Of a stretch of DNA of 64,000 nt, positions 38,771 to 60,465 are shown piece by piece (within the stretch, counting starts at the first letter, position 1; each line of letters opens with the position of its first letter). Origin of the DNA: Mizuhopecten yessoensis (Eukaryota). The stretch is taken from assembly GCF_002113885.1 (NCBI RefSeq), contig NW_018405566.1, forward strand, positions 1,348-65,347, read 5' to 3'. The translations under genes and the position numbers were made by a program. The notes below the pieces were generated by a model that saw only the letters and a program-made list of their open reading frames with translations, was not told where the DNA came from and made no database searches.

Positions 38771-41394
38771 AGCAAGTGAAATACCAATTCACAAATTCAG
38801 TCATTTTATATAAATAATTGTTTGAACTTTTGTGCCAGACAAAGGGACATGCTAATTGATCACATTACATATATAAGACCAGTGTGTTTGTAGGGAGTAT
38901 GAATTGATGTTTGATGACGCTGAGGGGAATCAACTGATTTCTGCCCGTACTTCCACTGGTCTTCGAATATCCACGTATTCTGTTTCTGCAACAAAAGTAC
39001 GATAGAGACGATATGATGATATTTGTTACCTATATAGATATAAATCTGCTGGGTAATCTTTTGGGGAAAATGAAAAATAAACGGAACAGAAAATCAATGA
39101 ATTGGAAATAGACCTAACGTACTTGTAAGAACTATTTTGACCTGTTGACCTACACTTTACATATGTTTGTGTACCAGATCATAATATGGGACCAGGGAGT
39201 ATATTTTAAGACTAGAACAAAGAGGGTTTTGTTATCATTATCATTTTTCTCCCGTTTTTGTGTGTATGTTTTCACAGTGAATGTATAAACGTACATAGCA
39301 GTCTATGTATAAAATCAATAAACGCCTTGAATGAGTTTCAATTTCACATAAATCCAATTACTTCACTAGAACTTGTGTTAATGACAGTTTTTGCTTGTTT
39401 CACTACAGAGCCTTCTGAATTGACATTCTTTATATCAATACATCTCCAGAAGTAAGATTTTTTTAACGATTTCTAATCACATTACCAAGATTAAATCGGA
39501 ATATTCGCAAAGACCACATTAGATGACTTAGAGTTTTCTATCGTCTTATTCATCAGGTCCATTGTTTACACTACACTATCACAAAGTCATCACTTCATGA
39601 CCTGCTTTTAATCTGACGTCATAAGTGAGTGATATTCTATAAAATTATCCGCAATAATATAACAGAACAAATCTTTGTATGCGGTTTTGGAATTATTTGA
39701 ATCTTCAGGAGGGTTTCGGGGTCAAGTTGAAGTATTTACAATTACAACCTGTACGTGTACATTACACAATACAATTGTGAAACGTTACACATCAATATAC
39801 GTGTTTAACATGTTTACAAGTTGTATACACATATTACTATCAGTGAAATGTGTTAATATTATACATGTATCAAATCAAGCAATGAATCTTTAAATAAATG
39901 ATTTTTTTATACTATAACACGGATTGCTAACACTGACAACTTAAAAAGCCCCGGTAGGTAATTATCCCAGTTAATCAGCTGGCGTGATAAAGGACTTTAC
40001 CACTATTTATTTATTATATTTTTACATATCAAACATATCAATAACAATTCCTTTGTTTAACTCATTCACCCCTACATTTTTAAAATGGACTTGCCCATTA
40101 TTTTGTTTTGTAAGGTTTCAATGTGACTTTAAGGGTTACTGGGTTAATATGTTTATGCTCCTTATGTCTTTTCGTGAAGTTCTCAGATCAACATAACCAA
40201 TAGGAAGAAATCGATCATCTGTAAATGTACTTAGTTTGATTCCAGAATCGAGAAAAGGTAAGTTTGAAACAAAGAAACCATAACAGAGTGTTAATGAATT
40301 GATTTAAGGAACCGTTAATACAACTACGTACCTGGGACGCGCATGTCCATATATTCACAAGGGCTACCAACGTCTTCTGCAGGTTTATCATCCGTTCTAA
40401 AGCAACATTATTTAAACATTTAAATTGTTATTTAAGAATTAAACATAAAGGAAGTCTATAAAAAGTTGCGCATTATTTGTTTCTACAAAGGTTATTACAA
40501 AAAACGGATTCCCACAATAGTCACCTCTCATAACATGCAGTAGGATACAGCAGGTCCTGTCCCCATACCAGCACAGAGTTATTTTGTTTCTTTTACAAAT
40601 TAAGACAATATCATTGAAGGAATTTTATGAAAATAAACCCCATATAAATGCTGAAGAGCATTAGCAGGGAAAGAAAAGTATTATAATAACATAACAATGT
40701 CAATTCAAGGATGAAGACAAAAGGTCATTCTATAGAATAACTTGTTGTAGACTGTCTACCAACTACAAGCTTCTTAGCTTTTTCATCAAAAACATATATA
40801 TAACTAATAAAAACTAATTTGATGCAAAAGATTGTATCATATTTTTGTTTTGTTTTTGTTCCAAAATGCTACGATTTTATTATTGCGTATTTTTCCCAAA
40901 AACTCCATGAAAAGCAAGATATATATATGCATGTTACAAATGCTCAAAGAAGAAACACTTACTTTTCTGACTCGCCCTCTACAAAATAATATAATACAAA
41001 TACGTTTCACATTAATGTAAATCAGGTCGATATCCTAAATCTGTCATCAAATCTATCCTATATTTACTATATTTAACTGTTAAAAATATATAATTATCTC
41101 GTAGTTACATGTCCTTTTCCTAGGTGGTGACAAACTTTTCATTATGGCGTCATTCGTGATAAATAGAAGTCGAGGGTGGGGGGAGGTGGGGGTGTATTCA
41201 CAGATAACGTTACAAGACCTATCTCAATTTATAAGAATCAGTGGTCGTAATAATAAACCAAGGCGAACAAAACCCCAATTAATATAGGAGACGTGTATCA
41301 CAGTAAATCTAAAAGCTTAGGTAAACAAGATATTTTGAATAGCGTTTACCAATAAGAATCCAATTAACTAGCACACAAGAACAATATGAACCAC

Positions 41395-41606
41395 AATACA
41401 CGACCCCGTCAACACACAACAACAAATACACGACCCCGTCAACACACAACAACAAATACACGACCCCGTCAACACACAACAACAAATACACGACCCTGTC
41501 AACACACAACAACAAATACACAACCCCGTCAACACACAACAACAAATACACGACCCCGTCAACACACAACAACAAATACACGACCCCGTCAACACACAAT
41601 AACAAC
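41395..41606. repeat. 30-bp minisatellite (~7 units)
   Basis: aatacacgaccccgtcaacacacaacaaca. Confidence 0.95.
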
Positions 41607-41682: not shown

Positions 41683-41705
41683 TCATTGCCAATATTTGTA
41701 CTGTT
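41683..41705 (-). CDS. IgSF/FN3 receptor, candidate last coding exon (EQYKYWQ*)
   Basis: attcag acceptor, phase-compatible with the upstream exon; tentative. Confidence 0.35.
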
Positions 41706-42482
41706 CTGAATCATGAATGTGGAAGCTGATATATATCGTAATATATGTGTGAGCAGTTTTTGGTGTGCCCATCTCCATATCATTTCAGAAGATAAACATG
41801 GTGACATCAGGTGTTGACAATTGCAGAGCCCGCGGCAGCCATCTTATAATTTGGGTTGATTCGATAATTCACATAAGTTACAAGAGGCAACCAAGGAAAC
41901 GGTGTAGCATGTTAGGTTAATAATGGACAGGTAGAACTAACAAAGAAGATTGTTGAAGGCAACTGTCAAATCAACATTCATTTAACTGTTATCGAAAACG
42001 AGAGGTTGACATTTTGCTTACTTACAATATGTCAATATGTTAATACAATATTAACCAAAGGAATATTTCTATTAAGTATGACTTATACTGGAATAGTCGT
42101 CCGAATTATTCTGACGTTTATCGACTTTTTTCATATCGGTCTGTGGTCGATTAACGTCAGAACTCCGGCCCTCTATAATATGCGGGAAATATGCGACCCG
42201 CGCCCGGAGCGCACTTCAAACTGATATTTTAGAAACAAATCGTCACTTTCACACACATGTCGCACATGGATCGAAAGATCTATTCTTTATTCTTTATATA
42301 TTTTCAGAGGTGATAATGTTAATGTTTCCTGGGATCATATTTTAACTTCTTTTTTTATCAAATTCGAATTCAAATTACGCATTTATGACAATTAATTAGT
42401 CATACAACATGACCATCAAATATTTTGACGTAAATTCGACACCACACTTTTCTGTGTATGCACATGTATAATTTATATTTAC

Positions 42483-42636
42483 CCGTTTCATCCACTTCCG
42501 TTATCGTTATTGAAACCATATCTCCCGATGTTGAGTCTTTGTTTACAATGTCGGGCGTGGGCACTGGGCTTCTATGTTTACGACTAGCAGGCTTCTTTAA
42601 GACAGCCGGTTTCGGCTTCTTTGCAGACAGATCCTT
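42483..42636 (-). CDS. IgSF/FN3 receptor cytoplasmic exon (Lys/Pro-rich)
   Basis: tttcag acceptor, gtaaat donor; KDLSAKKPKPAVLKKP..; phase 0 to 1. Confidence 0.7.
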
Positions 42637-43224
42637 CTGAAACATAATCATTGCCAACACTTAATGTTAAACAAACTCACAAATAGCTAAGCATAAAGTC
42701 ATAATATATATGGAATTGAGTTTGCACGGGTTTTCCTCACCCATTTGGGCTCGAATTTGCTTGAGAGGGTGAGGTTTGCAGTTTTCCCCTCATCCCTTTG
42801 TGCTGGAGTTTGCACGATTTTCTCTCACCCTATTGAGCGCTGCTTGCACACCAACTTCACTCCATTGAGCTAAATTTTACGTTCACCCCATTTATCTTAA
42901 ATTCTACCTTCCCTACGATTGAGCTGGAGTTTTAACCATCCCCAATATGCACGTTTGCTCTGACATATCAATACATAATGTATAATTTGAAAGGTTCAGA
43001 TGTTAAACCAACGAAAATAATCATCAATATATGACGGGGCAACATGACCTACTCTAATTTGTTTAGATATAAAGCAAGAGAAAGGATTGCATTACTTTCC
43101 CTTGAAAAACATACATGATCGTATGGAAAACATAGTTTTTTCGATAAAGGTTGGGAACACTTTTCAACACGTTTTCAACAATCAAAAGCTACTTTGACTT
43201 TGAGCTTAACTCGGCAAGACTCAC

Positions 43225-43345
43225 CTCCTGGTCAGTTTTTGGAACAACTAGTGACACATTTCCTTCTCCTGCTGTTACTGAACCGGAACCCGAAGATGTG
43301 AAAAGAGCAGATCCACCAGGTATGTCGTCATAAATATTGCCAAAG
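43225..43345 (-). CDS. IgSF/FN3 receptor cytoplasmic exon (NIYDDI)
   Basis: tttgtag acceptor, gag|gtgagt donor; phase 2 to 0. Confidence 0.75.
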
Positions 43346-44369
43346 CTACAAATTGATTCAAATTATTCCGAAAATATCACATTTAGTAATAATGTTTCAT
43401 TATAGTTGATCAAAGTATATTGTTTAAAAATTCGCTCTCTACAAAATTTAAAAACACCATCGATTGAGTGTCCATCAGTAAAATCAATGACTCTGTGACA
43501 TAAAATGATCGCTAGAAACACGAAATAAGTAACCTCTTTAAAAATGAAAGTTTAATTCGTAAACGATGCAAAATGTCAGGCAAAGCATATATTGTTACTG
43601 CGCCATATGGACACGACGTCTATTTTTTGTTAAAAGAAAGCATGCATATAAGACTAATGTACGTCTTACTGCTGTATTCAGCTGTCCTCGTCAGATTTAT
43701 AACAATGACAAGCAACAAAAAAAAATAAACGCCTTTTGATACATTTATACAATACCTCAGCACGTGTCAGTGTAACCTTTGGTGTCCCACGGTTTAACTG
43801 AGGAATGTTTGACGGCGATGTATGTAATAGTATGGATATTTTGTTATTTGATTTGTAATGCATTAGCTGTATTTCTTAAAAAACAAATCAGTTCCATGTT
43901 TTAACAGGTAATCGGATTATTCGGTCGGAGGTTAGATCGGATAATGGATTAGCCATACAATTGAGTAGTTATCCAAGTGTTTAATATAGTTTTTCACTGT
44001 AGACGTAATATTACTTCATCGGCCCATAATAATAAATAAAAAAAAAATGGATTGAAAGAATACGTACTCGTTCAGTATACATTGTATCAAATATATTTTT
44101 GTGATTATATATGGCCAAAGTAGATACCCGTGGTTTCCAGGATTGTGTAACAACTTATTTAAAATGGTGCAGGTCAATTTTCAATTTTATTAAAAAATTA
44201 ACTTGAACGCGATTTGCTCATCATTTTGCTCACATATACTGTTGCCCGGTTTCGTGTTGGAAATCCTTCACGGGAAGCTTGTTCATTAACTTAAACCTTG
44301 TTATTCGCCGCTATGACAAATGTTATTGCATACAAAAATTTCATTATTCCCAAAAATCCATTTTCACAA

Positions 44370-44838
44370 AAAAGGACAATTAGGAACCTTAGTGTCAATC
44401 TTGAGTAGGATCCCTCCGGCACTTTCTAAGAAATAGCGCTAACAATATTTGATTATCAAAATTCAAGATAGCCGCCAAACGGTCATCTCCGTTTCCAATC
44501 AGTCAAATAATTCGATAAGCGTAACAAGGGGACATGAGGATCCTTCATTTGAAATTTGAAGAAAAAACTTAAACTCTTCTTCATAAATAGTGCTAGCAAA
44601 CTTCAACTCCCAAAATTCAAAATTGATGCCTACCGTCTTGGTTTTCCGACCAGTCCCAAAATTCGATATGATTATTAAAGGGCTATCGGAAACCTTAATG
44701 TGAAAGTTGAGAAAGATCCCTTTAGCACTGTCTGAGAGATAGTGCTAACAAGAATTCTTAAAGAACGGAGGAACGACGGAACGCGAACGAAGGATAATTT
44801 AGATAGCCCAATATCAGATTGTGGTGGGCTAATAAAAA
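44370..44838. mobile_element. Helentron/HINE-type element (~150-bp internal repeats)
   Basis: Three diverged units containing aatagNgctaNcaa; gacgg motifs; terminal hairpin tagccca..tgggcta. Confidence 0.6.
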
Positions 44839-44977
44839 GGACAACGGTACATATTTGACGCAGAAATGACTGTTCCAGTCTGATGTAATAATTAAATGTA
44901 TAGTTCTGAGACCAATGTCCACATCACAACAGTTGGAATAGAGGAGAGATAAAAGCATCAGGTATCGTTTGACTTAC

Positions 44978-44999
44978 TTTTCTTTCTTGTTTACGTCAT
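44978..44999 (-). CDS. 22-nt micro-exon of the IgSF/FN3 receptor
   Basis: ttacag|atgacgtaaacaagaaagaaaa|gtaagt; phase 1 to 2, required for frame. Confidence 0.7.
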
Positions 45000-45250
45000 C
45001 TGTAATAACAATTTTTAATTATAAACGGATATAGCTGTTAAGTTGTTATGGAGGTAACGATGGTCGCGAGTAAAATAGAAACATCCAATTCGAAGGTTAA
45101 AGTAACAAAAGGAACAGAGATGACACAAACAAAACCAAAATGACATGTTAACCGCATTGCTCTTAAAAACTACAACAGAGACCAGATCAATTGCTCAGAA
45201 AAGGCAAACGTTTTTAATTCGCGTGTGGCATCCAAGTTGGTAAGAATTAT

Positions 45251-48205
45251 TATATTACCTACCTATATTTCTAACAGTTATTATATATCACCTACCTTTA
45301 TTTGTAGCAGTAGTTTATATCACATACCTTTATTTGTAGCAGCAGTTATATCACCTACCATTATTTGTGACAGTAGTTTTATCACCTACCTATATTTGTA
45401 ACAGTAGTTTATCACCTACTTATATTTGTAACAGTAGTTATATCACCTACCTATATTTGTAACAGAAGTTTTATCACCTACCTATATCTGTAACAGTAGT
45501 TTTATCACCTACCTATATTTGTAACAGTAGTAATATCACTTACCTATTTTTGTTACAGTAGTTATATCACCTACCTATATTTGTAACAGTAGTTATATCA
45601 CCTACTTATATTTGTAACAAATAATATATCACCTACCTATATTTGTAACAAATGTTATATCACCTACCTTTATTTGTAACAGTAGTTATATCATCTACCT
45701 ATACTTTTAACAAATGTTATACCATCTACCTATATTTGTAACAGTAGTTATATCACTTACCTATATCTGTAGCAGTAGTTATATCACCTACCTTTATTTG
45801 TAACAAATGTTATAATCACCTACCTATATTTGTAACAGTAGTTATACCACCTACCTATATTTGTAATAGTAGTTATATCACCTACCTATATTTCTAACAA
45901 ATGTTATAATCACCTACCTATATTTGTAACAGTAGTTATACCACCTACCTATATTTGTAATAGTAGTTATATCACCTACCTATATTTCTAACAAATGTTA
46001 TAATCACCTACCTATATTTGTAACAGTAGTTATACCACCTACCTATATTTGTAATAGTAGTTATATCACCTACCTATATTTCTAACAAATGTTATAATCA
46101 CCTACCTATATTTGTAACAAATGTTTTACCACCTACCTATATTTGTAACAACTGTTATATCACCTACTTATATTGGTAACAAATATTATATCACCTACCT
46201 ATATTTGTAACAGTTTGTTTGATCACCTACCTATATCTGTAGCAGTAGTTATATCACCTACCATTATTTGTAACAAATGATATATATCCTACCTATATTT
46301 GTAACAAATGTTATTCCACCTACCTATATTTGTAACAAATGTTTTATCACCTACCGATATTTGTAACAGTAGTTATACCACCTACCTATATTTGTAATAG
46401 TAGTTATATCACCTACCTATATTTGTAACAGTTGTTATACCACCAACCTATATTTGTAACAGTAGTTAACCACCTACCTATATTTGTAACAGTTTTTATA
46501 TCACCTACCTATATTTGTAACAAATGTTATACCACCTACTTATATTTGTAACAGTAGTTATACCACCTACCTATATATGTAGCAGTAGTCATATCACCTA
46601 CCTATATTTTGTAACAGTAGTTATATTACCTACATATATTTGTAACATTAGTTATACCACCTACCTATATTTGTAACAAATAATATATCACCTACCTATA
46701 TTTGTAACAGTAGTTATATCACCTACCTATATTTGTAACAAATGTTATATCACCTACCTTTATTTGTAGCAGTTTGTTTTATCACCTACCTATATTTGTA
46801 GCAGTTTGTTTTATCACCTACCTATATTTGTAGCAGTTTGTTTTATCACCTACCTATATTTGTAGCAGTTTGTTTTATCACCTACCTATAATTGTAATAA
46901 ATGTTATATCACCTACCCATATTTGTAACAGTAGTTATATCACCTACCTATATTTGTAACAAATGTTATACCACCTACTTATATTTGTAACAGTAGTTCA
47001 ACCACCTACCTATATATGTAGCAGTAGTCATATCACCTACCTATATTTTGTAACAGTAGTTATATTACCTACCTATATTTGTAACATTAGTTATACCACC
47101 TACCTATATTTGTAACAAATAATATATCATCTACCTATATTTGTAACAGTAGTTATATCACCTACCTATATTTGTGACAAATGTTATACCACCTACATAT
47201 ATTTGTAACAGTAGTTATATCACCTACCTGTATCTGTAATAGTAGTTATACCACCTACCTATATTTCTAACAAATAATATATGACCTACCTATATTTGTA
47301 ACAAATGTTATATCACCTACCTTTATTTGTAACAGTAGTTATATCACCTACTTATATTTGTAACAGTAGTTATATCACCTACTTATATTTGTAACAGTAG
47401 TTATATCACCAACCTATATTTGTAACAGTAGTTATATCACCTACCTATATTTGTAACAGTAGTTCTATCACATACCTATATCTGTAACAAATGTTATATC
47501 ACCTACCTATATTTGTAACATTAGTTATATCACCTTCCTATATTTGTAACATTAGTTATATCACCTACCTATATTTGTAACAGTAGTTATATCACCTACC
47601 TATATTTGTAGCAGTAGTTTTATCACCTACGTATATTTGTAACAGTAGTTTGATCACCTACCTATATTTGTAACAAATAGTATATCACCTACCTATATTT
47701 GTAACAAATAATATATCACCTACCTATATTTGTAGCAGTTTGTTTTATCACCTACCTATATTTGTAGCAGTTTGTTTTATCACCTTCCTATATTTGTAAC
47801 AGTAGTTATATCACCTACCTATATTTGTAACAAATAATATATCACCTTCCTATATTTGTAACAAATGTTATATCACCTACCTATATTTGTAACAAATAAT
47901 ATATCACCTTCCTATATTTGTAGCAGTTTGTTTGATCACCTACCTATATTTGTAGCAGTTTGTTTTATCACCTTCCTATATTTGTAACAGTAGTTATATC
48001 ACCTACCTATATTTGTAGCAGTTTGTTTTGTCACCTACCTATATTTGTAGCAGTTTGTTTTGTCACCTACCTATATTTGTAGCAGTTTGTTTTGTCACCT
48101 ACCTATATTTGTAGCAGTTTGTCTTATCACCTTCCTATATTTGTAACAGTAGTTATATCACCTACCTATATTTGTAACAGTTTGTTTATCACCTACCTAA
48201 ATTTG
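45251..48205. repeat. 31-bp minisatellite, ~95 units, derived from an exon-intron junction
   Basis: Unit atcacctacctatatttgtaacagtagttat; on the gene strand GTAGGTG...CAAATATAG. Confidence 0.97.
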
Positions 48206-48270
48206 AACCAATGGAGTTGTAAATACCAGATACCGGGCCTGCAGTTCTCTTTGTTCCTTCTTTACCTTTT
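48197..48270 (-). CDS. IgSF/FN3 receptor cytoplasmic exon (GIYNSI)
   Basis: ttttag acceptor, ag|gtaggt donor; KGKEGTKRTAGPVSGIYNSIGSNL; phase 2 to 1. Confidence 0.75.
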
Positions 48271-48561
48271 CTAAAATAATGATCGTGATATTATATCAAT
48301 AGTTTTATATCAATATAGACAAACAATTTACTACAATCATGTTTGGGAACCATGCATCCTTTGAAATGAAACAGAATTCAGTTTTTGATGTCTGACCGAA
48401 ATATTATTTTAATGACATATTACAAATAATCAAATAGTAATCGACGACTCCCATGGTAGCAAAACATTTAATTATGTATCAGAAATCCGACTATGTAGTT
48501 GTTTTTTGTAGGTTTTGTATTCAAAGCAGTAAAAACCCTAAACGACCTGCAGCCAACTTAC

Positions 48562-48583
48562 CTTGCATTTCGAAGTCGTTTTT
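48562..48583 (-). CDS. 22-nt micro-exon of the IgSF/FN3 receptor
   Basis: tttcag|aaaaacgacttcgaaatgcaag|gtaagt; phase 1 to 2. Confidence 0.7.
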
Positions 48584-48627
48584 CTGAAACGGAGAACCCA
48601 GTTATCATTAGTATTGTACAAAAAGAG

Positions 48628-49068
48628 TTTGGTTTGGTTTGGTTTGGTTTAACGTCCTATCAACTATTCGTGTAGTGTTTTGGGAGGCTGCAAAATGTTC
48701 GCGTTTGTCTCCTTTTGATAGCGTGGAACTGATGCCGACTTTATAGTGCTACCTCACTGAAAAATACTGCCGAAGACACCCAACAAGATGGGGTACCCCA
48801 CCCGGTCACATTATACTGACAACGGGCGAACCAGTCGTCCAACTCCTAAATTGCTGAGCGTTATGCAGGAGTAGAAACTACCATTTTTCCAGACTCTAGT
48901 ATGTCTCGGCCAGGGGAAAACCCCCAAAGCCTTCCTCACAGGGGCGAACGCTGAACTAAAGGCCAAAAGTTAGGCATTGTCATGGGAGATTTTAGGTGGA
49001 AGGAAGTTGTTTAGAAAGAAGAGAAAAGATAAGATACCAAATTTAGTCGCCTCTTACGATTATGCAAT
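48628..49068 (-). mobile_element. Near full-length Meta-type SINE with 5' leader
   Basis: Degenerate tRNA head, cagtataatgtgaccgggtggg core, Nimb-like tail, (AAACC)n. Confidence 0.8.
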
Positions 49069-49425
49069 GATAACAATTCTATATTTCATTACGTTTGATT
49101 TTTTTTCTAGTAAAATATAGTGTTGAACGCTCAACATTAAAACCAAACGTGAGGTATTAACAAGCAAATCACTAGTAAATAAAATTACTTTAAAAGTAGA
49201 GAGAAATATTAATATCCCAGCTATTGCAACGGGTGCAGCAGATTCATTTTGGTCACTTTTGTGTCCCCAAGTAGAGGACACAAAAGCAAAACCCCAATTC
49301 TGCATCGGATTCACGCATTAGTCGCCTCTTACGAAACCAATACAGTGGGTAACAGCAGGTGTATTCTTCTCTCGATCCTCGACCTGCAGGGTTGGTGTGT
49401 GCTTCATTAATTCATATTATATACC

Positions 49426-49601
49426 TGTGTCAGGGTTCAATTGTACATAGGATTAAGGTCGCCTTCTAGCTTCGAGCTAGAGGGAATTTCCCTTTAGCTC
49501 AGTGGTAAAGCGTCCGACTAGGAACCTGGAGATCGAGGGTTCAATCCCCGGTGGAAGCACACTATTCTCTTTCCTTTTACAAATGGGGCCGTGACCAGGA
49601 T
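49426..49601 (+). mobile_element. LTR containing a tRNA-like Pol III cassette, followed by a tRNA-His-type PBS
   Basis: A box tagctcagtgg, B box ggttcaatcc; LTR end ccttttaCA at 49581; PBS tggggccgtgaccaggat 49584-49601. Confidence 0.6.
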
Positions 49602-49984
49602 ACCATACCACATACCATTAGTGATCGGTTTGTTTCAGAGGATAAATAGCTACCGATACGAATCATGAAATATGTATCATATTACTAATGCTAAGTTACA
49701 GAAAAGATATAACAAGTTATCTAAATTAGCACGATATACATTGATATGAATGTAAACAGACTGAATGAAATGTACAATTTCTAAATGAGTACCTACTGTA
49801 TCTTAGACGTACCTCAACATGTACTTTTGTTATATGTATTGCTGATTATGCCTTTGAATGAAATTTTAAAAAATTGAAAGAGAAAAATATACAGTATAGG
49901 TTTTAAACCATGGTGTCCAAGCCTTTATCAAATATAACGTCAATTAATGAAATATGTTGGAATGTTCAGTAGATCTCTACTCAC

Positions 49985-50110
49985 CGATGGCAGGTGCATC
50001 GGTTTTGCTAAAGTTGTCCAAGTCTTCGTACACAGGATCAGACTCTTTGACCTCCGGTGACCGACACGGAGCGGGCAGTCCACAGAGGCTGCTGCCCCGT
50101 GATACATTTC
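49985..50110 (-). CDS. IgSF/FN3 receptor cytoplasmic exon (PVYEDL)
   Basis: tttcaaag acceptor, g|gtgagt donor; phase 1 to 1. Confidence 0.8.
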
Positions 50111-50637
50111 CTTTGAAACAAAAGAAACTGTTAATTAACATTTTACTAAGATGAGGGTAAAAAGAAGAATGGTAATATGAATATGGACATATGTATTAAA
50201 ATACGACAACTGGAAAATCATCTATTTTCGAGAGATTTTTAATTTATTGATCTTGAATAAATAATGTCGATCGACAAATGCATGGATTTTCCTAATTCGA
50301 TGACCTGGAATCAGGCCAAATCGACTCTTAAGAAGTTTCACCATAACAATATTGACGATATCTTTTCGCGAATTCATATCTTCAATCTTGATTATTTTTA
50401 GCAGAACGAAAACGCCAAACAAGAGGGATAAATACAAGTTGTAATAACTTATTAAATAATTTCTGTAAATTAAATAAGTTTTAGATAAAATCCTTTTGAA
50501 GAAATCAGCCTGTATTCACAGATATTTTCTAACCGTAAAAGAATTCTGTTGGAAATATTTAAACTAAGGTACTTCATAGAGATATCTACGTTTATTGCTT
50601 GAGACTTGTGCATGTGAATTTTCTTTCTTTATGTTAC

Positions 50638-50742
50638 CTTGCTTAAGTCTAATCGCCAAGCCGATTCCAATCATCAGCAGTATAAGGCTGGCTACCACAA
50701 TCAATGATAAACCAACATGGAAGTACGCTATTCCATTCTCAT
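50638..50742 (-). CDS. IgSF/FN3 receptor transmembrane exon
   Basis: DENGIAYFHVGLSLIVVASLILLMIGIGLAIRLKQ; tttcag acceptor, aag|gtaaca donor. Confidence 0.85.
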
Positions 50743-51124
50743 CTGAAATTATACAGCCACTGCTATTATATTTTTTGATAATGCCGTATAACAACGCTGA
50801 AATACAGCATTCCACCCTTATCTGAAATCTTACAGCCACATATATTTTTGTTTTATAATGCCGTATTATATGGAAAAACAGCATTCCATTTTGATCTGAA
50901 TTCATACAAAATCAATAATTTGATGTTTTAAGATGCGATTAATGCGAAAATCACGTTTAAATGTAAAAAGTTCTTTCTTTCTTTCTTTAAAATAATCGCA
51001 TGTGAAACAAATGACGCATTATTATGCCAATATTCACATTAAATTCCAGAATAAGTCTTTAGTTTCTTGGGTATGTATATAGTCCAATGTTAGACCAAGA
51101 GCTACTCGTAAACCTTTTTGCAAT

Positions 51125-51965
51125 TGTGACACAGCCAAACAAGAAAATCCTGCCTTAGCGATGCGGCATAACACGGGAACGCGATCACTAGTTCAGCAAC
51201 GTTGAACGTGGTCTGTGGTTGGATGGTTTACCGTCTATACGTTACATTTGGTGACAGCGGTAGGATTTTGTGGTATGTCGTGAAAGGCATGTTAAGGTGG
51301 TGGTTAAGGAAGGTAAAATGGTACACAAGGGGGGCTCAAGGGATTTTCAAGGTACAGTCTTGGGACTAGAAATAAAAAAGCAAAAGCAAAAGAATAAGAG
51401 GGTAAAACATTGCCTTACTGACAAGCTATTTTTTCCAGTGATGCGGTAAAATCCGGATGAAATGGTACACAGGGAAGACTAACAGAATTCCTAAGACCAA
51501 GTCCTTGGACCAGATTTCTAGGAGGGGAATAGAGAAACAGCCAAGGAATCAGAGGAGAAAATAATGCCTTACTGGCAACCTAACATTTTCATGGATACGG
51601 TTTAATCCTGGGACGCGGTCATGAGTTCAGCAACATCTCGTGTAGTCAGTGGCTGGATGGGATACGCATGTAAGTTGCTTTTGGTGGCAGTGGTGTGAAC
51701 CTGTGGTAGCATGTAAGGTCAGCTCTCGGTGGCTAAAGAAGGTATATGGTACACAGGAAGGACTCGCAGGATTTTCTAAGGCCATGTCTTGGGACTAGAT
51801 TCTCGTAGGGGAAGTGGGTTAACAGCCAAGGAAAAAGGGGGATAACTAATGCCTAACTGGAAAGCGTGCTTTCCAAAGGATGCGGTGTAAACCTTGGACG
51901 CGCTCACAAGTTCCACAAGGTCGAGTGTGGTCGTTACCTTGATGGCTGCCGACTTGCACGTTATA
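51125..51965 (+). mobile_element. Tandem array of a 5S-rRNA-containing TRIM (LTR-PBS-internal-PPT-LTR)
   Basis: Four LTR copies (one truncated), 5S box A/C in three, tRNA-Leu PBS at 51249 and 51682, purine tracts before LTR starts; unit ~287 bp. Confidence 0.75.
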
Positions 51966-52320
51966 ACTCAAGGTGACAGTGTCTAAAGTGACGTTCATAA
52001 CCGATTACATATGCTTTCACGCGATCTTTCTGAGATAGTATAGTCATATAAAAAATAATTGTATAGGTCAACACACTGTCAAATATGCAGGGATATATCA
52101 ACACACTGTCAGATATACTAGTATATATATACACACTGTTAGATATGCCGGTAGATATACAATGTATAGTAGGCCAACGTTTATTACAAACCACAAGCTA
52201 CATTGTCGACATGACACCTGAATTTATTTTGATATTGCATCGTTCAATATCAGAGTCAGTTAATTGTTATAAATATATCTCGCGACTTGACACAAATATG
52301 AAAACAAAAGTTCTACGAAC

Positions 52321-52470
52321 CTGATGATATGGCAATGTAGATAGATACTGAAGGACTCCTACCTACGGCATTGTAGGCCGTGACAGACACGCTGTAGGCT
52401 CTGTTCGCTTGAAGACCTGTGATTCTGCTTGAGAACTGTATATCTGCCTGAGCGTTACCAGACTTTATTC
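52321..52470 (-). CDS. FN3 domain, C-terminal half exon
   Basis: ITGLQANRAYSVSVTAYNAVGRS; phase 1 to 1 using the ttgaag acceptor. Confidence 0.8.
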
Positions 52471-53214
52471 CTTCAACACATAACAGAAACCTATGCAAAA
52501 GTACAGAAAAAATGCCCAGTGTCTTCTACACGAAAATATCTCCTGAATATGCCTTGAACATCATTCATATTTCAGAATGTGTATGGTGGATTTGATTTAG
52601 TCGTATATGTTTTTGTTCGCGATGAAGCAGAAAATTGTTACCCTTCTGGAACACATGGACCTGTGTTTCTTGTTTTTATCAAGGGTCACTATGTTAATCT
52701 TTTCTAATTGTCATATTTATAAGTTAAAATTACTGTTTGGTTCACACTTAAGTGTTTTACTGTCGTTGATTTAATACATAAGATGTTTGACTCTAATTAC
52801 TTTATAATATTGGGTTATCGAGGTTCTGTCAACAGCCTGTAGCTAGACACACGCTCTTAGTTCATATTTATATTAGCTACATACAGAACATAAGGAAATG
52901 GCTCTACATTTATGCAATTGTCTTAAAAATTTAAAATGAATAACAAGGAACACCAACCTTATTGTCATACATGTGATCGACTATTTACAGACAAACACTA
53001 AAAAAAATCAAAACACAAACGGATTGGGCAGCAGGCATAGCCTATTTAAGCCCTCTCCAAACACGGTAACAAACAGTGGTAAAAGCATAGACATAGACAT
53101 TAGAACACATACAAACACATATAAACAGGTTGATATTTATCGAATTAATAATTAAATTAGGGGAAACAACTACTAAATCATATCTTTATCATAATTGAAT
53201 AAAATGGTTTAAAT

Positions 53215-53540
53215 TCTAACTTTTTTATTTTGATACCAAAAAGTACCTATATACTAATGTCCATGAAAATCGGAGGATATTTAAATTTGGATGATCAAAG
53301 GCCATGAAATGGCAGCTATTTTGTTGAAACCGGATATGGACGTTACAGTTTTATGTGTGGTATCATATAGTACCTATATATACCAATTTTCATGAAAATC
53401 GGACAATATTTAGATTTTGACATATTTGTTGCCTCCTCATGGCGGCCATTTTGTTTTAAGAATCAGAAACCGGTATGCGCACTGCATAAGAAACGGGGCA
53501 AAAACAATAAGTACCCCCTCTTCGTTTAGGGGACATAATA
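53215..53540. mobile_element. Helentron/HINE-type fragment
   Basis: catgaaaatcgga x2, ggcggccattttg, terminal cccc..gggg hairpin. Confidence 0.5.
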
Positions 53541-53604
53541 ACAACAACGTACAGATTGTGGAATAAGGCATGGTATCGCCATTTTGAATTAGGATTACAC
53601 TTAC

Positions 53605-53769
53605 CGTCCACTTGTGTGTATGGACCGACGGTCAGTCCGCCAGTGTCTGGCAGGACAAGGATGTTGAAGCTCACGCGGTACACTGACTCTGGCTCCATGT
53701 TCCATATCAAACTGACATCCACGTCGCTAATGTACTCCATGGAAATAGCAGTTGTTTTAGTCGGTAAAC
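53605..53769 (-). CDS. FN3 domain, N-terminal half exon
   Basis: SLPTKTTAISMEYISDVDVSLIW..YRVSF; cattag acceptor, g|gtaagt donor. Confidence 0.8.
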
Positions 53770-53830
53770 CTAATGAAATAGCAGCAAGTTTAGCAAGTTA
53801 ATCTAAGTACAAAATAGAATAGCATGATGA

Positions 53831-54027
53831 NNNNNNNNNNNNNNNNNNNNNNNNNNNNNNNNNNNNNNNNNNNNNNNNNNNNNNNNNNNNNNNNNNNNNN
53901 NNNNNNNNNNNNNNNNNNNNNNNNNNNNNNNNNNNNNNNNNNNNNNNNNNNNNNNNNNNNNNNNNNNNNNNNNNNNNNNNNNNNNNNNNNNNNNNNNNNN
54001 NNNNNNNNNNNNNNNNNNNNNNNNNNN
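53831..54027. other. Assembly gap flanked by a (GAT)n microsatellite
   Basis: Run of N; GAT repeats at 54028-54160. Confidence 0.95.
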
Positions 54028-54784
54028 GATGATGTTGTTGATGATGTTGTTGATGATGATGATGTATTAAGATGATAATGGTGTATTACTATTGATGATG
54101 ATTGACAAGGCTGAAGATGATATTCAGTCACGATGAGGATGATGATGATGATGATGAAAGATATGACGATGCAAGAGACAAACCATGCAAATGGGAATTG
54201 TATGTATGTGGGTGTATATGTGTTTATGTATTTATGTAATAAAAATGTCTTTAAAAATAAACAAATTATAAAAAAAATAATAATAGAATAGCAGTAAGTT
54301 TAGCAGATAAGCATTAGTACAACAACAAAATGGTGTTTGGTTTGGCAGGTGGAACTTAGTACAACTATCAAATAGCAGTAAGTATAGCAGGTAAACATTA
54401 AAATTATAAATTATAAAAATTGCAGTGTTTCTAGCAGGAAAGCATTAGTACATCAATAAAATTGCAGTGTGTTTAACATGTACATTAGGTAAATCGATAC
54501 AATAGCAGCAAGTTTAGACGGTATCTTAAGAATTAAACAGTCGTGCGTTAAGCAGGTAAACATACCTGTAGTACAACACAACAATATCAGTAAATTGATA
54601 GGTAAACAATAACAACATAGCTGTAGGTTTAGCAGGTAGACCTTAGTACAATAATACAATCGTATAGGTTTGAACGGGAAGACCCTAGTTCCACAAAAGA
54701 CACAAGTATTAACCTTTTGTTTGACATTTTCTTTAATCGGCCACACTTTACAAGCCGAACACGAAGTTAATACATACAGTAGAA

Positions 54785-54897
54785 TAATATTGTGTTTACA
54801 GTGTAATATTGTGTTTACAGTGTAATATTGTGTTTACAGTGTTATATTGTGTTTACAGTGTAATATTGTGTTTACAGTGTTATATTGTTTTTACAGT
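54785..54897. repeat. 19-bp minisatellite (~6 units)
   Basis: taatattgtgtttacagtg. Confidence 0.9.
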
Positions 54898-55008
54898 AAA
54901 CGTCTCATTCGCCATATGTGGAACCTCTAATAATATATCTTGTAAAAACAAAACGTATGTTGTTTATTGACATCATTCTTTAGTATAAACGACCCGACAA
55001 AGACTTAC

Positions 55009-55341
55009 TCAGGACGATAATCTCAAGTAGGTTGGAGTTGACGCTAGAACGGTTGTTGACTGCATTACAACTTATGAAGGAATTCAATGATCCAGAGGAC
55101 CTCTCCGCCATTATAGTCAAGTTTTGGTAAGTTCGAAACAAGTCTTTGCCAACAGAAACAATAGACAAGGTATCAGCTGACGAGGATATGTCGCCGTTGT
55201 CTCTGATCCAGCTGATGGTGGCCTGGGGTCGACTAGGGGACGTCTCACAACGTAAAGTGACATTTTCACCTTCTTTCACTACTAGTTGGTCTCCGATAAT
55301 ATCCCCGGACAAACTTACAAGGTAGACAGACTCCACGGGCT
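55009..55341 (-). CDS. Ig domain exon (C2/CD80-like, nephrin-type)
   Basis: VKEGENVTLRCETSPSRPQATISW..ISCNAVN; cccag acceptor, a|gtaagt donor; phase 1 to 1. Confidence 0.88.
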
Positions 55342-57302
55342 CTGGGATATGAAATAAAAATGAGCAACATTATGTATTTGCAAATCAGTTGTGGCACGAC
55401 GAACGGTGTATCTGAATAAACACAAACAACAGTATGCATAATACATGTAAGTTTTCGTAATACAAACTATTGATATCACCCCTGCAGATCGAGAGAGAAA
55501 AAAGAATGCATGAGGTAACTATGAAGACAAAAACACGTGTAGCAAGCATCGGTGATTGGCTTCTGTGCCTTCCAATTCGGGACACAATGGTGGAAAAAAT
55601 AATATACTGCCACACTTGGCTTTAGTGTTGAACATTCAGCCAATGACGAGGAATTCTGTCCCCAGTAGTTGTTATTTCATGCTAAAGGGTATTCGCAACA
55701 ACTGGTTAACCCGTTGTCATTATAATGTGACCAAGCGGAATGCTAAAAGAACCTGCTAAATACATGGTGTTTACACAGAGGTAAACACATTTATACCGAG
55801 TGCTGTTTTAGTATACATGGCTAAACTCGAAAAAATATCAGTTCATTCCTTGAATCAAGGATATGCACAAATTTGGTCTGCCCCAAAAAAGCATTAATAC
55901 TTTCAGGAACAGAAAGTATATCTTGTTTGGTGTCAATAAAAATGTCTTTCTATAGACTTTATTGTTTTGTTCTACAATACTAGAAACATCAACCAAATAA
56001 ACATACAGGGATGTTTTCTATGGAACCGGGACCCAATTGAGAGAGCAGTTTCTTTGAAACCACTAGTCACTGTAATAGCAATTAACTAATATGGAAATTC
56101 TTCTGTACGCTTATATGAAGATGTTTGACTGATAACATTCCTGCACAATAGTTAGTTTCGAATCTTTTGATTTTCAACTTAACGAAATAATACGAAGACA
56201 TGGTTTTATGATTTGAGATAAAATAACAAATAAGTAAATAAATAAAATTTCAAGCATTTCAAATGAAACAATTTTCATTTGTTCTGTACACTTTTTTGTC
56301 ACATTTTGGTTTTACTTTGCAATTTTTCAATTATAGTACAAGGAATAGATGGCATACCAGCTTTAGAAGTACCCTCAGAATTACCGAAAATCTTATATAA
56401 TATATAGATTTTGGCCTATTAGAATAAATAACACAGACCCATAAACTGCCAAAATATAGCTGTCCTGCTACTATTAAAACGAATACAGACCATGTCTTAT
56501 AGTAACTATTGTTTTTATAAAACACTGGATAACGCATAAATACAAAATAGCGACAGTCTATACTGAAAAAAGGACATGTTTATACTTTGGGCTTCACCAA
56601 ACACCCTTCGTGTCCTTGGTAAGCACGAAGTTTAGCGTCATGATAGAATACTATGTTAAGATTTCTTACTGATACGGGATCTATAAAGATCGTCTTCACT
56701 GGACTCAAAATAATAACAATGTAAACATAGACCAATAAGTAATTGCAGCTTGACATATTACTTTTGTTTTAATTGTCAATTGTTTCAATACACACACAAA
56801 AATTGTGTTGACATTGGATATGAAATGTGATACTTTCGGAGGAGTGTGCAATGCTTAAGTAGATCCAGCAGAACTTTATTTCAAATAGTTTGTTTTGACT
56901 TCCTTTCTTCTTAATCATTTGCCATTTTCCTATGCTATCCTGTACTAGACATATTGATAGAAAATAGTGCCATATACTTTTTTCCAGTTATGATTAATAA
57001 AACAATATTATATTTAAAGTGAAAAAAAACTATAAAGACTAAGTTTATTTTCAACACAAACAGGAATTGAAAACTTATTTGACGAGATTTCGAAAACGTC
57101 TGTTTCCTTTATCAGGCAAAGAGTGCATCGAAACAAACTTAGTCATTATCATTCAAACCAAACTTACGAATCCTACTCCAAAGAAAAAATACTATGTCAT
57201 GTTAATGCAGAAACATAATCAATAAATAAAAGATGTCCAAACCGAATTTTTGTTTTTGTAATTATTCTGATATTTCATAGTAGACCACTGTTTGTAGCTT
57301 AC

Positions 57303-57710
57303 CGATGACGTAGATCTTGGTAGAGATGGTAAGTGTAGAACGGGAGCTCCAGTTACCCACTATCACAACACAGTAAATCGTGTCGTCATGTCGAGGCTGT
57401 TCAACAGAGAACCGTACCAACGTCTCGTTTACCCAGCATGCCTGCGAAATGTTCCTACCTTCCTGGCACATATCTATTGCTGATAACGTCACGGATCCAA
57501 GGGTGTTTTCGCCTGTGCTGCTAGTTGACCACTGCAGCACCGATGCCGGTGATGTGCCGGCCATTATTGTGATGGTCAGTATCAGAGGCTGACCTTTCAC
57601 GACTGTGGCTTCAGGATGAGGACTGAGAGACAACACAGGTGACGTAGACATGGACGTTGGTGAGGACGATAGGACCGATGTCCATGGTTCATATGTGACG
57701 TAACATCCCA
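57303..57710 (-). CDS. N-terminal non-canonical Ig-like domain exon
   Basis: ATVVKGQPLILTI..LQW..DDTIYCVV; ttgtag acceptor, g|gtaagc donor; phase 1 to 1. Confidence 0.8.
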
Positions 57711-58489: not shown

Positions 58490-60465
58490 TTAATCAGCTG
58501 TAATGATATTAAGTTAAACCCAGGTCCTCTAGAACCTAGAATGTTCTCACCTCAATATAAGATCCTTAAGAAACAAGACTGATATTGTTGAAACCGAATT
58601 ACATGAAAGGGATAATATCTGCCTAACTGAAACACACCTCAACCCTGAAATACCTAATTCTGAACTAATAATTCCATGTTACTCTGAACATCTTTATAGG
58701 CTGGATAGAAAACTGGTCCCGTTGTTTGGGTTTTAATCTATCACAAAAATAAAATTTTCGCTAAATGATGATCTTGAACATAATGAATTTGAAATGATAT
58801 GTGTGGAAATCCATATTGAGGCGCACAAGTTTCTTCTGGCTTGTCCATATAGACCAGAATCACCAGTTACATATTGGGAAATTTTAGATCGAGTCATTAA
58901 AAAAGCTGTAAACACTAACTTAGATATAGTGATTACTGGTGATATTAATATGAACATGTTAAATCTTCAACCCCATTCTCACCTTGGTAGACTAATGACA
59001 AAATTTAATCTTTCTAGTTTTATCACAGACCCCACCCGTATCACTCCAACTCCATCAACTTCAATTGATATGGTCTTTTCCAACAACAGAAATCTAGTTA
59101 GAAAAGCATCTGTGCTTCCTCCTATATGTAGTGACCATTCTCTGATACAATTAAATATTTCCTATGCAGTTTTCAAAAAAAAGCAATATTTTATGCGACA
59201 CTATAAAACACTTAATTAATTAGTCTATAGCCGTTAAGTATGCAACAGTTAGACCAAACGATAAAAAATGGATGACTAATGATATTAGACTACATATAAG
59301 ACAACGAAATAGGGCTCATAGGGTTGCAAAATCTAGTAATTCGGCTTTTTTCTGGGAAAATTACAGAAACAAAAGAAATGAAACAATTAGTAAAATATGT
59401 GATGCCAAGAAAAGGTATGTTGAAAATTTACACAAAGCATTAACCGACAAAACTATTAGCCCTAACAAGTGGTGGAAAATTGCACAAATGTCCTTAATAT
59501 AAATAACAAATCTACTTCTACTCCCCCACTAACACACAATAATTCATTGAAATACTTTGTATCAATATCTACCACTTCTGAAAATGCTGAGCCTATACCT
59601 GAAACTACTAACGATTTTCCTTATTCCATTAATGATATTGTTATAACCCAACAGGATGTTGAAGATCAGCTATTTCTTTTGAATGCTAATAAACCTGCTG
59701 CACCAGATAATATGATTCCCAAAATAATCAAACAATAACATCCATCTAACCTCTTTCCTCTAACTCTTCTATTTAACAAAACACTTGAAACTGGTAGCAT
59801 TCCCTTCAGCTGGAAGATGGCTAATATTAACGCTATTTATGAAGGTAAAGGATTAGTTAATGAGGTGATTAATTACAGACCTATCTCTGTTACTTCATGT
59901 TTGAGTAAAATGTTAGAAAAATCATTTTTAAATATCTATATAATTACCTCATTACTTATAAAATCATTAAAAAATACCAGTCTGGCTTTACATCTAAAGA
60001 TTCAACTGTAAATCAATTATTGTCTATTTACCAAAACAATGTTAATTGCCTAGATCAAAATAAAGAAATCAGATTTATATTCTGTGACATAAACAAGGCT
60101 TTTGATAGAGCTTGACACAATAGACTGCTAAAGGTTATCTCTTAAATTGGTTTTCGTAACTTTTTATCATACAGAAAACAGAGTGCTAACTGAAGGTTAT
60201 ACATCAACCTTTGACCCTGTTCAAGCAGTGGTTCCAAAAGGCTCGGTCCTCGGTCCGTTATTGTCTTTGATATGTATTAATGATATTGTTGATTGTGTTT
60301 CCAGTAGAATTGAATTATTTGCAGATGACCTCTCTCTATGGTATATGTGATAATAATCCCATTGAATTGGCACAAAATCTTTCTAATGACTTGACTAATA
60401 TTAAGCTGTGGGCCATTAAATGGGACATTAAATGTAATCCTTCTAAAACTGAATCTGTAATATCC
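58490..60465 (+). mobile_element. Decayed CR1-clade LINE ORF2 (APE endonuclease + RT)
   Basis: DIKLNPGP, ICLTETHL, YRP, ITGDIN, PTRIT, SDH; NYRPIS, QSGF, DINKAFD, VPKGSVLGP, FADD; many stops. Confidence 0.92.

What the first reader, a model, noticed from the sequence alone, without database searches (positions are those of the whole stretch)
41683..57710. Candidate Ig-Ig-FN3-TM receptor with three tyrosine docking motifs, possibly for immunity or allorecognition
Twelve phase-compatible exons give ~567 aa; the signal-peptide exon was not located and the last exon is tentative. Domain 1 lacks the usual B-strand Cys but has W, D..IYC and an extra Cys pair. The tail has VYEDL, IYNSI and IYDDI (hydrophobic-Y-x-x-hydrophobic SH2-type sites, not canonical ITIM/ITAM) and a Lys/Pro-rich segment. 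Established: Ig domains + FN3-like region + TM + Tyr motifs is the architecture of Hydractinia Alr allorecognition proteins and of many signalling immune receptors. Function here is inference only.
Basis: partly seen in the sequence, partly recalled or inferred. Interest (0 to 1): 0.7.

Follow-up and report, generated by a model that had tools for sequence, protein, structure and literature searches.

The report
Scallop-only Ig receptor with tyrosine tail
This is a real but uncharacterised Yesso scallop gene for a cell-surface receptor found only in scallops, with two immunoglobulin-type domains, a fibronectin-type domain and five conserved tyrosine signalling sites; nothing here supports a role in self/non-self recognition.

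Summary
The gene is real, on the minus strand. It is Mizuhopecten yessoensis LOC110449066, annotated "uncharacterized", with isoforms X1-X3 of 625, 575 and 573 aa.

Its tentative last exon near 41.7 kb is wrong. Three more exons (40978-40963, 40396-40332, 38985-38930) end the gene and add two further conserved tyrosine motifs, EYMDM and EYVDI. The signal-peptide exon lies 13.6 kb upstream, outside the window. The N gap sits in an (ATC)n repeat inside intron 3 and touches no exon.

The architecture is signal peptide, S/T/P-rich stretch, V-like Ig domain without the B-strand Cys, C2 Ig, FN3, TM, and a 222-aa tail. All five tail tyrosines sit in motifs invariant across four scallop genera.

Relatives of domain 1 were found only in Pectinidae. 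The gene has no neighbouring paralogue. It is a syntenic 1:1 orthologue (shown in one genus), and domain 1 is not its fastest-evolving part (dN/dS about 0.2-0.4 throughout).

It most likely works as a non-catalytic, tyrosine-phosphorylated adhesion or signalling receptor. Immune function is possible but untested, and allorecognition is unsupported. No RNA reads could be obtained. The scan earlier noted another scallop-only Ig receptor group with tyrosine tails, on other DNA.

The parts
57303..57710 (-). Coding exon 2 (408 nt, phase 1-1): poorly conserved S/T/P-rich stretch, then domain 1, a V-like Ig domain lacking the B-strand Cys. The internal donor at 57459 is used by RefSeq isoform X3, which drops the second half of D1.
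   Evidence: Exact mapping to P0001/P0005. AF2 model pLDDT 61 with V-set matches. X3 difference. Donor listed.
55009..55341 (-). Coding exon 3 (333 nt, phase 1-1): canonical C2-type Ig domain with the Cys...W...Cys pattern.
   Evidence: Pfam Ig_3, ig, Ig_2 and C2-set_2 above their cut-offs. Mapping.
53831..54027 (.). Assembly gap inside intron 3, flanked on both sides by ATC/GAT trinucleotide repeat. It touches no exon.
   Evidence: Orthologue junction comparison.
53605..53769 (-). Coding exon 4 (165 nt, phase 1-1): first half of the FN3 domain (strands A-C').
   Evidence: fn3 passes Pfam in orthologues P0003 and P0007. AF2 strands.
52321..52470 (-). Coding exon 5 (150 nt, phase 1-1): second half of FN3 (strands E-G, Y-x-V-x-V-x-A-x-N-x-x-G). 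It is a cassette: present in isoform X1 and OWF51497.1, skipped in X2. The same skip is annotated in Pecten maximus X4.
50638..50742 (-). Coding exon 6 (105 nt): short stalk plus the transmembrane helix VGLSLIVVASLILLMIGIGLAI.
49985..50110 (-). Coding exon 7 (126 nt): juxtamembrane tail with Tyr motif 1, DPVYEDLDN.
48562..48583 (-). Coding exon 8: 22-nt micro-exon (EKRLRNAR) that shifts the splice phase from 1 to 2.
48197..48270 (-). Coding exon 9 (74 nt): Tyr motif 2, VSGIYNSI. Its donor is the first unit of the 31-bp tandem array in intron 9.
44978..44999 (-). Coding exon 10: 22-nt micro-exon (DDVNKKEN). It is absent from the Ylistrum model.
43225..43345 (-). Coding exon 11 (121 nt): Tyr motif 3, NIYDDIP.
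   Evidence: The second 94%-identical copy on contig C82527 reads NMYDDIP.
42483..42636 (-). Coding exon 12 (154 nt): Lys/Pro-rich segment with the invariant core KKP-x-SRK.
40963..40978 (-).
40332..40396 (-).
38930..38985 (-). Coding exon 15: Tyr motif 5, TEYVDI, and the TGA stop at 38932-38930. This is the true 3' end of the coding region.

Best explanation
The locus encodes a functional single-pass type I membrane protein restricted to scallops (Pectinidae). From the N terminus it has a signal peptide, a short S/T/P-rich and probably O-glycosylated stretch, a membrane-distal V-like Ig domain that has lost the canonical B-F disulfide, a canonical C2 Ig domain, one FN3 domain, a TM helix, and a 222-residue tail predicted to lack any domain.

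Shown: the exon structure, the domain content, the restriction to four scallop genera, purifying selection, and five invariant Yxx[L/I/V/M] islands that hold every tyrosine of the Yesso scallop tail.

Inferred mechanism: it acts as a non-catalytic tyrosine-phosphorylated receptor. Binding of a ligand or a counter-receptor by the distal Ig domains clusters the protein. A Src-family kinase then phosphorylates the acidic-context tyrosines (YEDL, YNSI, YDDI, YMDM, YVDI). SH2 proteins dock on the phosphotyrosines. YMDM fits the p85 PI3-kinase consensus pYxxM. The pair YMDM-x6-10-YVD[I/V] is an ITAM-like tandem that could hold a tandem-SH2 protein of Syk or SHP-2 type. YEDL and YDDI resemble Src-type pYEEI sites.

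Annotated in-frame splice variants remove half of the FN3 (exon 5) or half of D1, and would change the length or binding ability of the ectodomain. Ligand, cell type and biological role (adhesion or immune sensing) are unknown.
For: Public models of this gene map exactly onto 14 window exons with canonical splice sites, and the signal exon lies upstream.

Pfam Ig domains pass in exon 3, and fn3 passes in orthologues. The D1 model is V-set-like: PD-1, nectin, TIGIT and SIRPa at Foldseek E about 1e-3, TM 0.55-0.62, VIA Z about 9. Distant paralogues keep the canonical Cys, which supports an Ig origin for D1. The ectodomain model matches Ig-FN3 tandems of NCAM and contactin, and Kirre/Neph D1-D2.

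Orthologues occur in Pecten, Ylistrum and Argopecten, and D1 found only these among 1.84 billion representatives. An intronless 2,132-nt contig from a public sequencing run carries the Argopecten orthologue, so its exons appear to be joined in mRNA.

dN/dS is 0.21-0.44 in every domain. The five Tyr motifs are conservation islands: 25 of 40 columns invariant against 29 of 178 in the rest of the tail, Fisher p = 1e-8. All five tail tyrosines of the Yesso protein lie in them.
Against: There is no expression, phosphorylation or binding data.

No canonical ITIM occurs in any orthologue. A canonical ITAM pattern appears only in Ylistrum, as the pair YNSI-x11-YDDI. The ITSM reading of TEYVDI holds in only two of four genera. 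The SH2 partner assignments are motif matching from general knowledge.

The D1 model has only moderate confidence (pLDDT 61, and below 50 in the three-domain model). dS is near saturation (1.0-1.8), so the dN/dS values are rough.
Confidence: 0.55

Rival explanations
1. It is a haemocyte immune receptor. The ectodomain binds microbes or damage signals, and the tail switches haemocyte activation on or off. This would parallel oyster CgNCAM1 (3 Ig + FN3 + TM + two ITIMs), which binds PAMPs and recruits SHIP2.
For: The architecture resembles CgNCAM1 (PMC11841013). The family is lineage-restricted and evolves fairly fast, at 43-55% identity between genera against 59-77% for the neighbouring Branch gene. 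It has an ITAM-like C-terminal tyrosine pair and a YxxM site. Earlier scan notes report another scallop-only Ig receptor group with Tyr-rich tails (unchecked).
Against: No expression data could be obtained. There is no canonical ITIM or ITAM in the Yesso protein. No paper mentions this gene or its Pecten orthologue. Ig-FN3 ectodomains with Tyr tails are equally typical of developmental adhesion molecules.
Confidence: 0.25
2. It is an allorecognition or self/non-self marker in the manner of Hydractinia Alr: a highly polymorphic distal domain binds homophilically, and the tail reports match or mismatch.
For: The overall layout matches (V-like, Ig, FN3-like, TM, Tyr motifs; PMC9546547). A language-model look-alike list includes an 'Allorecognition 2' cluster at 0.94, among nephrin, NCAM and other generic IgSF clusters. 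A second 94%-identical copy of exons 11-12 shows 6 non-synonymous changes, 3 synonymous changes and an in-frame indel.
Against: D1 is single-copy and the gene has no adjacent paralogue cluster. Four genera have single orthologous loci, with synteny shown for Ylistrum. D1 is not more divergent than the other domains and has dN/dS 0.34. Scallops are solitary, non-fusing animals (general knowledge). The look-alike score has no alignment or E-value behind it.
Confidence: 0.03
3. It is a tissue adhesion molecule of epithelia or neurons, in the manner of Kirre, nephrin or NCAM. Its main job would be cell-cell adhesion, with the tyrosines coupling to the cytoskeleton.
For: The best sequence and fold matches for Ig2 and FN3 are Robo, SYG-2 (nephrin), contactin, NCAM and Rst/Neph1. 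The feature look-alikes are mostly nephrin-like clusters. The motifs are invariant across genera, and synteny with the neighbouring gene holds in Ylistrum.
Against: No orthologue was found outside scallops, unlike the widely conserved nephrin, Kirre and NCAM families. The matches are generic to IgSF domains, at 10-17% identity.
Confidence: 0.3

Closest known systems
Crassostrea gigas CgNCAM1 (PMC11841013)
   Same: It is a bivalve single-pass IgSF protein with Ig domains, one FN3, a TM helix and a tyrosine-motif tail. The paper reports that it recruits an SH2 protein.
   Different: CgNCAM1 has three Ig domains and two canonical ITIMs. The scallop protein has two Ig domains, no ITIM and five other Yxx[LIVM] sites. 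I did not test homology between them, and no oyster relative appeared in my searches.
Hydractinia Alr1/Alr2 family (PMC9546547)
   Same: Both have atypical V-set-like first domains, further Ig and FN3-like modules, a TM helix, tyrosine motifs in the tail, and splice variants that alter the domain architecture.
   Different: Alr genes form a 41-member cluster and are highly polymorphic. This gene stands alone with a single orthologous locus in each of four genera and a D1 under purifying selection. No sequence homology was shown.
Nephrin/Kirre (SYG-2/SYG-1, Rst/Neph1) and NCAM/contactin adhesion molecules
   Same: They give the best sequence and fold matches for the C2 Ig and FN3 domains. Nephrin also signals through tail tyrosines that bind SH2 adaptors and PI3K p85 (general knowledge).
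   Different: They have many more Ig domains and are conserved across Bilateria. The scallop D1 and tail have no detectable counterpart in them.
Vertebrate non-catalytic tyrosine-phosphorylated receptors with a V-set distal domain (SIRPa, PD-1, TIGIT, nectins)
   Same: The predicted D1 fold matches their V domains (TM about 0.6, Z about 9). They share the logic of a small Ig ectodomain with tail tyrosines read by SH2 proteins, and PDGFR-type YMDM is a known p85 site (general knowledge).
   Different: Identity is only 10-20%, at fold level. They have no FN3 domain, they carry canonical ITIM/ITSM motifs, and D1 here lacks the canonical disulfide.

Membership tests
Immunoglobulin superfamily | At least one domain matching Ig profiles with Cys(B)...Trp(C)...Cys(F) | tested here: met
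   Exon 3 passes Pfam Ig_3 (31-39 bits against 30), ig, Ig_2 and C2-set_2. C175, W188 and C235 are invariant.
Immunoglobulin superfamily, V-set (domain 1) | V-type beta-sandwich with the canonical B-F disulfide | tested here: inconclusive
   There is no Pfam hit. The AF2 model (pLDDT 61) matches V domains. W and D-x-IYC are present, but the B-strand Cys is absent in all four genera. Distant paralogues keep it.
Fibronectin type III | Match to the fn3 profile above its cut-off, with a seven-strand sandwich | tested here: met
   The Yesso protein scores 19-22 bits (cut-off 25), but orthologues P0003 and P0007 score 25.6 and 28.0. Seven strands are predicted at residues 257-350 of the model. Contactin and NCAM FN3 matches.
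ITIM-bearing inhibitory receptors | [S/I/V/L]-x-Y-x-x-[I/V/L] in the tail | tested here: not met
   The regex found none in any of the four orthologues.
ITAM-bearing activating receptors | Y-x-x-[L/I]-x6-8(12)-Y-x-x-[L/I] | tested here: not met
   Only a non-canonical Y-x-x-M-x6-10-Y-x-x-[I/V] pair is conserved. A canonical pattern appears only in Ylistrum, through the spacing of YNSI and YDDI.
PI3K p85 docking sites | Y-x-x-M in the cytoplasmic tail | tested here: met
   YMDM or YMEM is invariant in four genera. Actual binding was not tested.
Hydractinia Alr-type allorecognition genes | Member of a clustered multigene family in one genomic interval | tested here: not met
   No paralogue lies in the 64-kb window. 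D1 is single-copy in the genome. Only 29%-identical relatives exist, on another contig.
Hydractinia Alr-type allorecognition genes | Extreme allelic polymorphism of the distal domain | not testable with these tools
The only second copy covers exons 11-12. Between genera D1 has dN/dS 0.34.
Nephrin/Kirre/NCAM orthologue | Recognisable orthologues outside Pectinidae with the same domain count | tested here: not met
   The exhaustive HMMER search with D1 found only three scallop clusters below E 1e-10. The profile word search found only scallop proteins.

The most novel reading that the evidence does not exclude
Scallops evolved their own immunoreceptor-type signalling module. This would be a Pectinidae-only V-like/C2/FN3 receptor whose conserved YxxM-x6-10-YxxI/V pair works as a non-canonical ITAM, recruiting Syk-type or PI3K effectors in haemocytes. 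Conserved cassette splicing (half of FN3, half of D1) would switch its reach or its ligand binding. It would be one of several scallop-only IgSF receptor families with tyrosine tails.
Probability: 0.15. Interest if true: 0.55.

Novelty: new member of a known kind. Interest (0 to 1): 0.3.

Why it matters
If it signals as proposed, the gene is a compact, lineage-specific example of an invertebrate building a tyrosine-motif receptor from standard Ig and FN3 parts. It comes with a ready set of five conserved sites to mutate and two in-frame splice variants to compare. That would help in working out which SH2 pathways bivalve cells use. As it stands, it is an already annotated, uncharacterised IgSF gene with an ordinary architecture, and it gives no handle on allorecognition.

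Tried and rejected
- **Paralogues in the window.** tblastn of all exons found none.
- **Word-based protein searches.** The full protein and the tail alone returned only the gene's own models. Only the profile search added Pecten and Argopecten.
- **Tail look-alikes in the ESM Atlas.** The best score was 0.77, which is uninformative.
- **Literature.** A search for the locus names found no papers.
- **Three-domain AF2 model.** D1 came out below pLDDT 50, so I used that model only for Ig2-FN3.
- **My first splice guesses.** I had proposed a weak AAAAG acceptor for the IYNSI exon and a phase clash at the IYDDI exon. The two 22-nt micro-exons, which I had missed, resolve both.
Rejected.
- **Hidden exon in the N gap.** Judged unlikely from the orthologue junctions, but not excluded.
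- **ITSM reading of TEYVDI.** Rejected as a family feature, because the Thr is present in only two of four genera.
- **Orthologue genomic loci.** The look-up of encoding contigs had no record for the Pecten and Argopecten models that I asked for.


Full report
**What is there.** The window comes from the Yesso scallop. The protein accessions name the organism, and earlier scan notes say the same. Pfam recognises an Ig domain in the stretch 55369-54983, with Ig_3, ig, Ig_2 and C2-set_2 above their cut-offs. It also finds the C-terminal half of an fn3 domain in 52525-52316.

**Identity of the gene.** I ran an exhaustive HMMER search with the domain-1 exon against 1.84 billion representative proteins. 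It returned four hits at E <= 0.001, three of them below 1e-10.
- P0001 is 100% identical. It is XP_021351328.1, "uncharacterized protein LOC110449066 isoform X2" of Mizuhopecten yessoensis.
- The other two strong hits are uncharacterised proteins of Pecten maximus (58%) and Ylistrum balloti (50%).
- A profile search added Argopecten irradians.
- Cluster look-ups gave isoforms X1 (625 aa), X2 (575 aa) and X3 (573 aa), and the original genome-project model OWF51497.1.
- No paper mentions these loci.

**Exon structure.** Mapping the public models onto the window gives 14 coding exons, all with AG acceptors and GT donors:

| Exon | Coordinates | Content |
|---|---|---|
| 2 | 57710-57303 | S/T/P-rich stretch and D1 |
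| 3 | 55341-55009 | Ig2 |
| 4 | 53769-53605 | FN3, first half |
| 5 | 52470-52321 | FN3, second half |
| 6 | 50742-50638 | TM |
| 7 | 50110-49985 | VYEDL |
| 8 | 48583-48562 | 22-nt micro-exon |
| 9 | 48270-48197 | IYNSI |
| 10 | 44999-44978 | 22-nt micro-exon |
| 11 | 43345-43225 | IYDDI |
| 12 | 42636-42483 | Lys/Pro-rich segment |
| 13 | 40978-40963 | 16-nt micro-exon |
| 14 | 40396-40332 | EYMDM |
| 15 | 38985-38930 | EYVDI and TGA |

- The two 22-nt micro-exons explain the phase changes that at first looked incompatible to me.
- The signal-peptide exon (MFWNLKVTLGVFFLALAPPH, phase-1 GT donor) lies at L008:7321-7262. That is 13.6 kb upstream of exon 2 and about 7.3 kb beyond the window end.
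That area is a 30-bp tandem repeat in intron 12.
- I sent no joined model of my own to any search tool. Full-length analyses used the public proteins returned by the tools. In a script I checked only that the exon set translates to P0005, and I computed substitution rates exon by exon.

**The gap.** The N run 53831-54027 lies in intron 3, inside an ATC/GAT trinucleotide repeat, 62 nt upstream of the exon-4 acceptor. Exon 3 ends and exon 4 begins in phase 1, and the public models join them directly. Pecten and Argopecten have no extra residues at this junction. Ylistrum has 13 extra residues there, which come from longer exon ends and not from a separate exon. A hidden exon is therefore unlikely, though not excluded.

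**Domains.**
- *Domain 1.* D1 has no Pfam match. Folded alone with its three orthologues, it gives a moderate model (pLDDT 61) with A-A'-B-C-C'-E-F-G strands. Its best matches are V-set domains of PD-1, nectin-4, CD155, TIGIT and SIRPa: Foldseek E about 1e-3, TM 0.55-0.62, VIA Z about 9, rmsd about 3 A over about 96 residues.
- *D1 cysteines.* All four genera lack the B-strand Cys. They keep Trp, D-x-IYC and an extra Cys pair. Distant paralogues on contig C4945 are 29% identical and do keep the B-strand Cys. This supports an Ig origin for D1 with secondary loss of the disulfide.
- *Ig2.* It is canonical.
- *FN3.* It falls below the Pfam cut-off in the Yesso protein but passes in Ylistrum and Argopecten. 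Seven strands are predicted.
- *Whole ectodomain.* The three-domain model matches Ig-FN3 tandems of contactin and NCAM, and Kirre/Neph D1-D2. The profile search of PDB sequences gives Robo, SYG-2 and contactin. All of these are generic IgSF resemblances.

**Tail.**
- The Yesso tail is 222 residues long and has exactly five tyrosines. All five lie in Yxx[L/I/V/M] motifs that are invariant in the four genera: YEDL (YQDL in Ylistrum), YNSI, YDDI, YMDM (or YMEM) and YVDI (or YVDV).
- Motif windows are far more conserved than the rest of the tail: 25 of 40 columns invariant against 29 of 178, Fisher p = 1e-8.
- No orthologue has a canonical ITIM. A canonical ITAM pattern appears only in Ylistrum, from the spacing of YNSI and YDDI. 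The ITSM reading of TEYVDI holds in only two genera.
- YMDM fits the p85 SH2 consensus pYxxM (established knowledge).
- The last two tyrosines form a YxxM-x6-10-YxxI/V pair, which is ITAM-like but not canonical.
- A basic core, KKP-x-SRK, is also invariant.

**Evolution and genomic context.**
- D1 is single-copy in the genome, and the window holds no paralogue.
- The only relatives are distant. A tandem group on C4945 has D1-like, Ig, Ig and FN3 exons.
- In Ylistrum the gene has the same exon layout and the same convergent neighbour, a Branch-domain (PF02485) glycosyltransferase. That neighbour is duplicated in the window at about 16-18.8 kb and 31.8-35.1 kb.
- Identity between genera is 46-72% for D1, 47-60% for Ig2, 43-54% for FN3 and 42-51% for the tail. 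The Branch neighbour shows 59-77%.
- Nei-Gojobori dN/dS between Yesso and Ylistrum is 0.34 (D1 exon), 0.21 (Ig2), 0.33 (FN3), 0.23 (TM) and 0.44 (tail). dS is near saturation.
- The protein therefore evolves fairly fast but under purifying selection, and D1 is not singled out.
- A 2.7-kb contig, C82527, is 94% identical to window 42291-44663. In exons 11-12 it differs by six non-synonymous changes, three synonymous changes and one in-frame 6-nt deletion. It may be a second haplotype or a recent duplicate.

**Transcription.**
- Indirect support comes from RefSeq isoforms in three species.
- More concretely, an intronless 2,132-nt contig from a public sequencing run (SRR19746224) encodes 612 residues of the Argopecten orthologue in one open frame. 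It includes FN3 and all five motifs.
- Exon 5 (150 nt) is skipped in Yesso X2 and in Pecten X4. Yesso X3 uses an internal donor at 57459 that removes 52 residues of D1. Both events keep the frame. Whether they are functional is unknown.

**Interpretation.**
- The most likely mechanism is that of a non-catalytic tyrosine-phosphorylated receptor, as set out under Best explanation. The steps after domain and motif content are inference.
- Adhesion and immune roles cannot be separated with the data at hand.
- The closest characterised bivalve analogue by layout is oyster CgNCAM1 (PMC11841013).
- The Alr comparison (PMC9546547) fails on the clustered-family criterion tested here, and polymorphism could not be tested.
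- A feature-based look-alike list that includes an Alr2 cluster among nephrin and NCAM clusters is only a lead.
- Earlier scan notes describe another scallop-only Ig receptor group with tyrosine-rich tails on other DNA. My profile search did not connect its tail to this one.

**Verdict.** This is an already annotated but uncharacterised, scallop-restricted IgSF signalling receptor: a new member of a known kind. Interest is modest.

Noticed in passing
window 45250-48205: A 31-bp tandem array of about 95 copies fills most of intron 9. It starts exactly at the exon-9 donor, and each unit on the gene strand carries TAG|GTAGGTGA, a copy of that donor.
   Followed up: partly
window 50730-50908: A 79-bp unit repeated 2.3 times just upstream of the TM exon duplicates its acceptor region (TTTCAG|AT...). 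Only the last copy is used in the public models.
   Followed up: partly
window 16047-18774 and 31843-35107 (+): Two paralogous copies of a Branch-domain (PF02485, core-2/I-branching glycosyltransferase) gene lie here. The nearer copy is convergent with the receptor gene, the same arrangement as the single copy in Ylistrum balloti (L012:69019-74195).
   Followed up: partly
window 58794-59219 (+), with ORFs to about 60555: A fragment of a non-LTR retrotransposon (Exo_endo_phos endonuclease, followed by RT-like ORFs) lies inside the 13.6-kb first intron.
   Followed up: partly
G000:C82527:1-2671 (L022): A small contig is 94% identical to window 42291-44663 and includes exons 11-12. It differs by 6 non-synonymous changes, 3 synonymous changes and an in-frame 6-nt deletion (IYDDI becomes MYDDI). 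It is either an uncollapsed haplotype or a recent duplicate.
   Followed up: partly
G000:C4945:205400-251000 (L025-L029): A tandem group of distant relatives has D1-like (29% identity, canonical B-strand Cys kept), C2 Ig, a further Ig and FN3 exons, repeated about 28 kb apart. No similar tail exons were detected.
   Followed up: partly
window 57459: An internal GT donor (AAG|GTAGGA) in exon 2 is used by RefSeq isoform X3. It removes 52 residues (strands E-G) of domain 1 in frame.
   Followed up: partly
window 41395-41605: A 30-bp unit repeated 7 times (97% matches) in intron 12 creates long repeat-derived open frames on both strands.
   Followed up: yes
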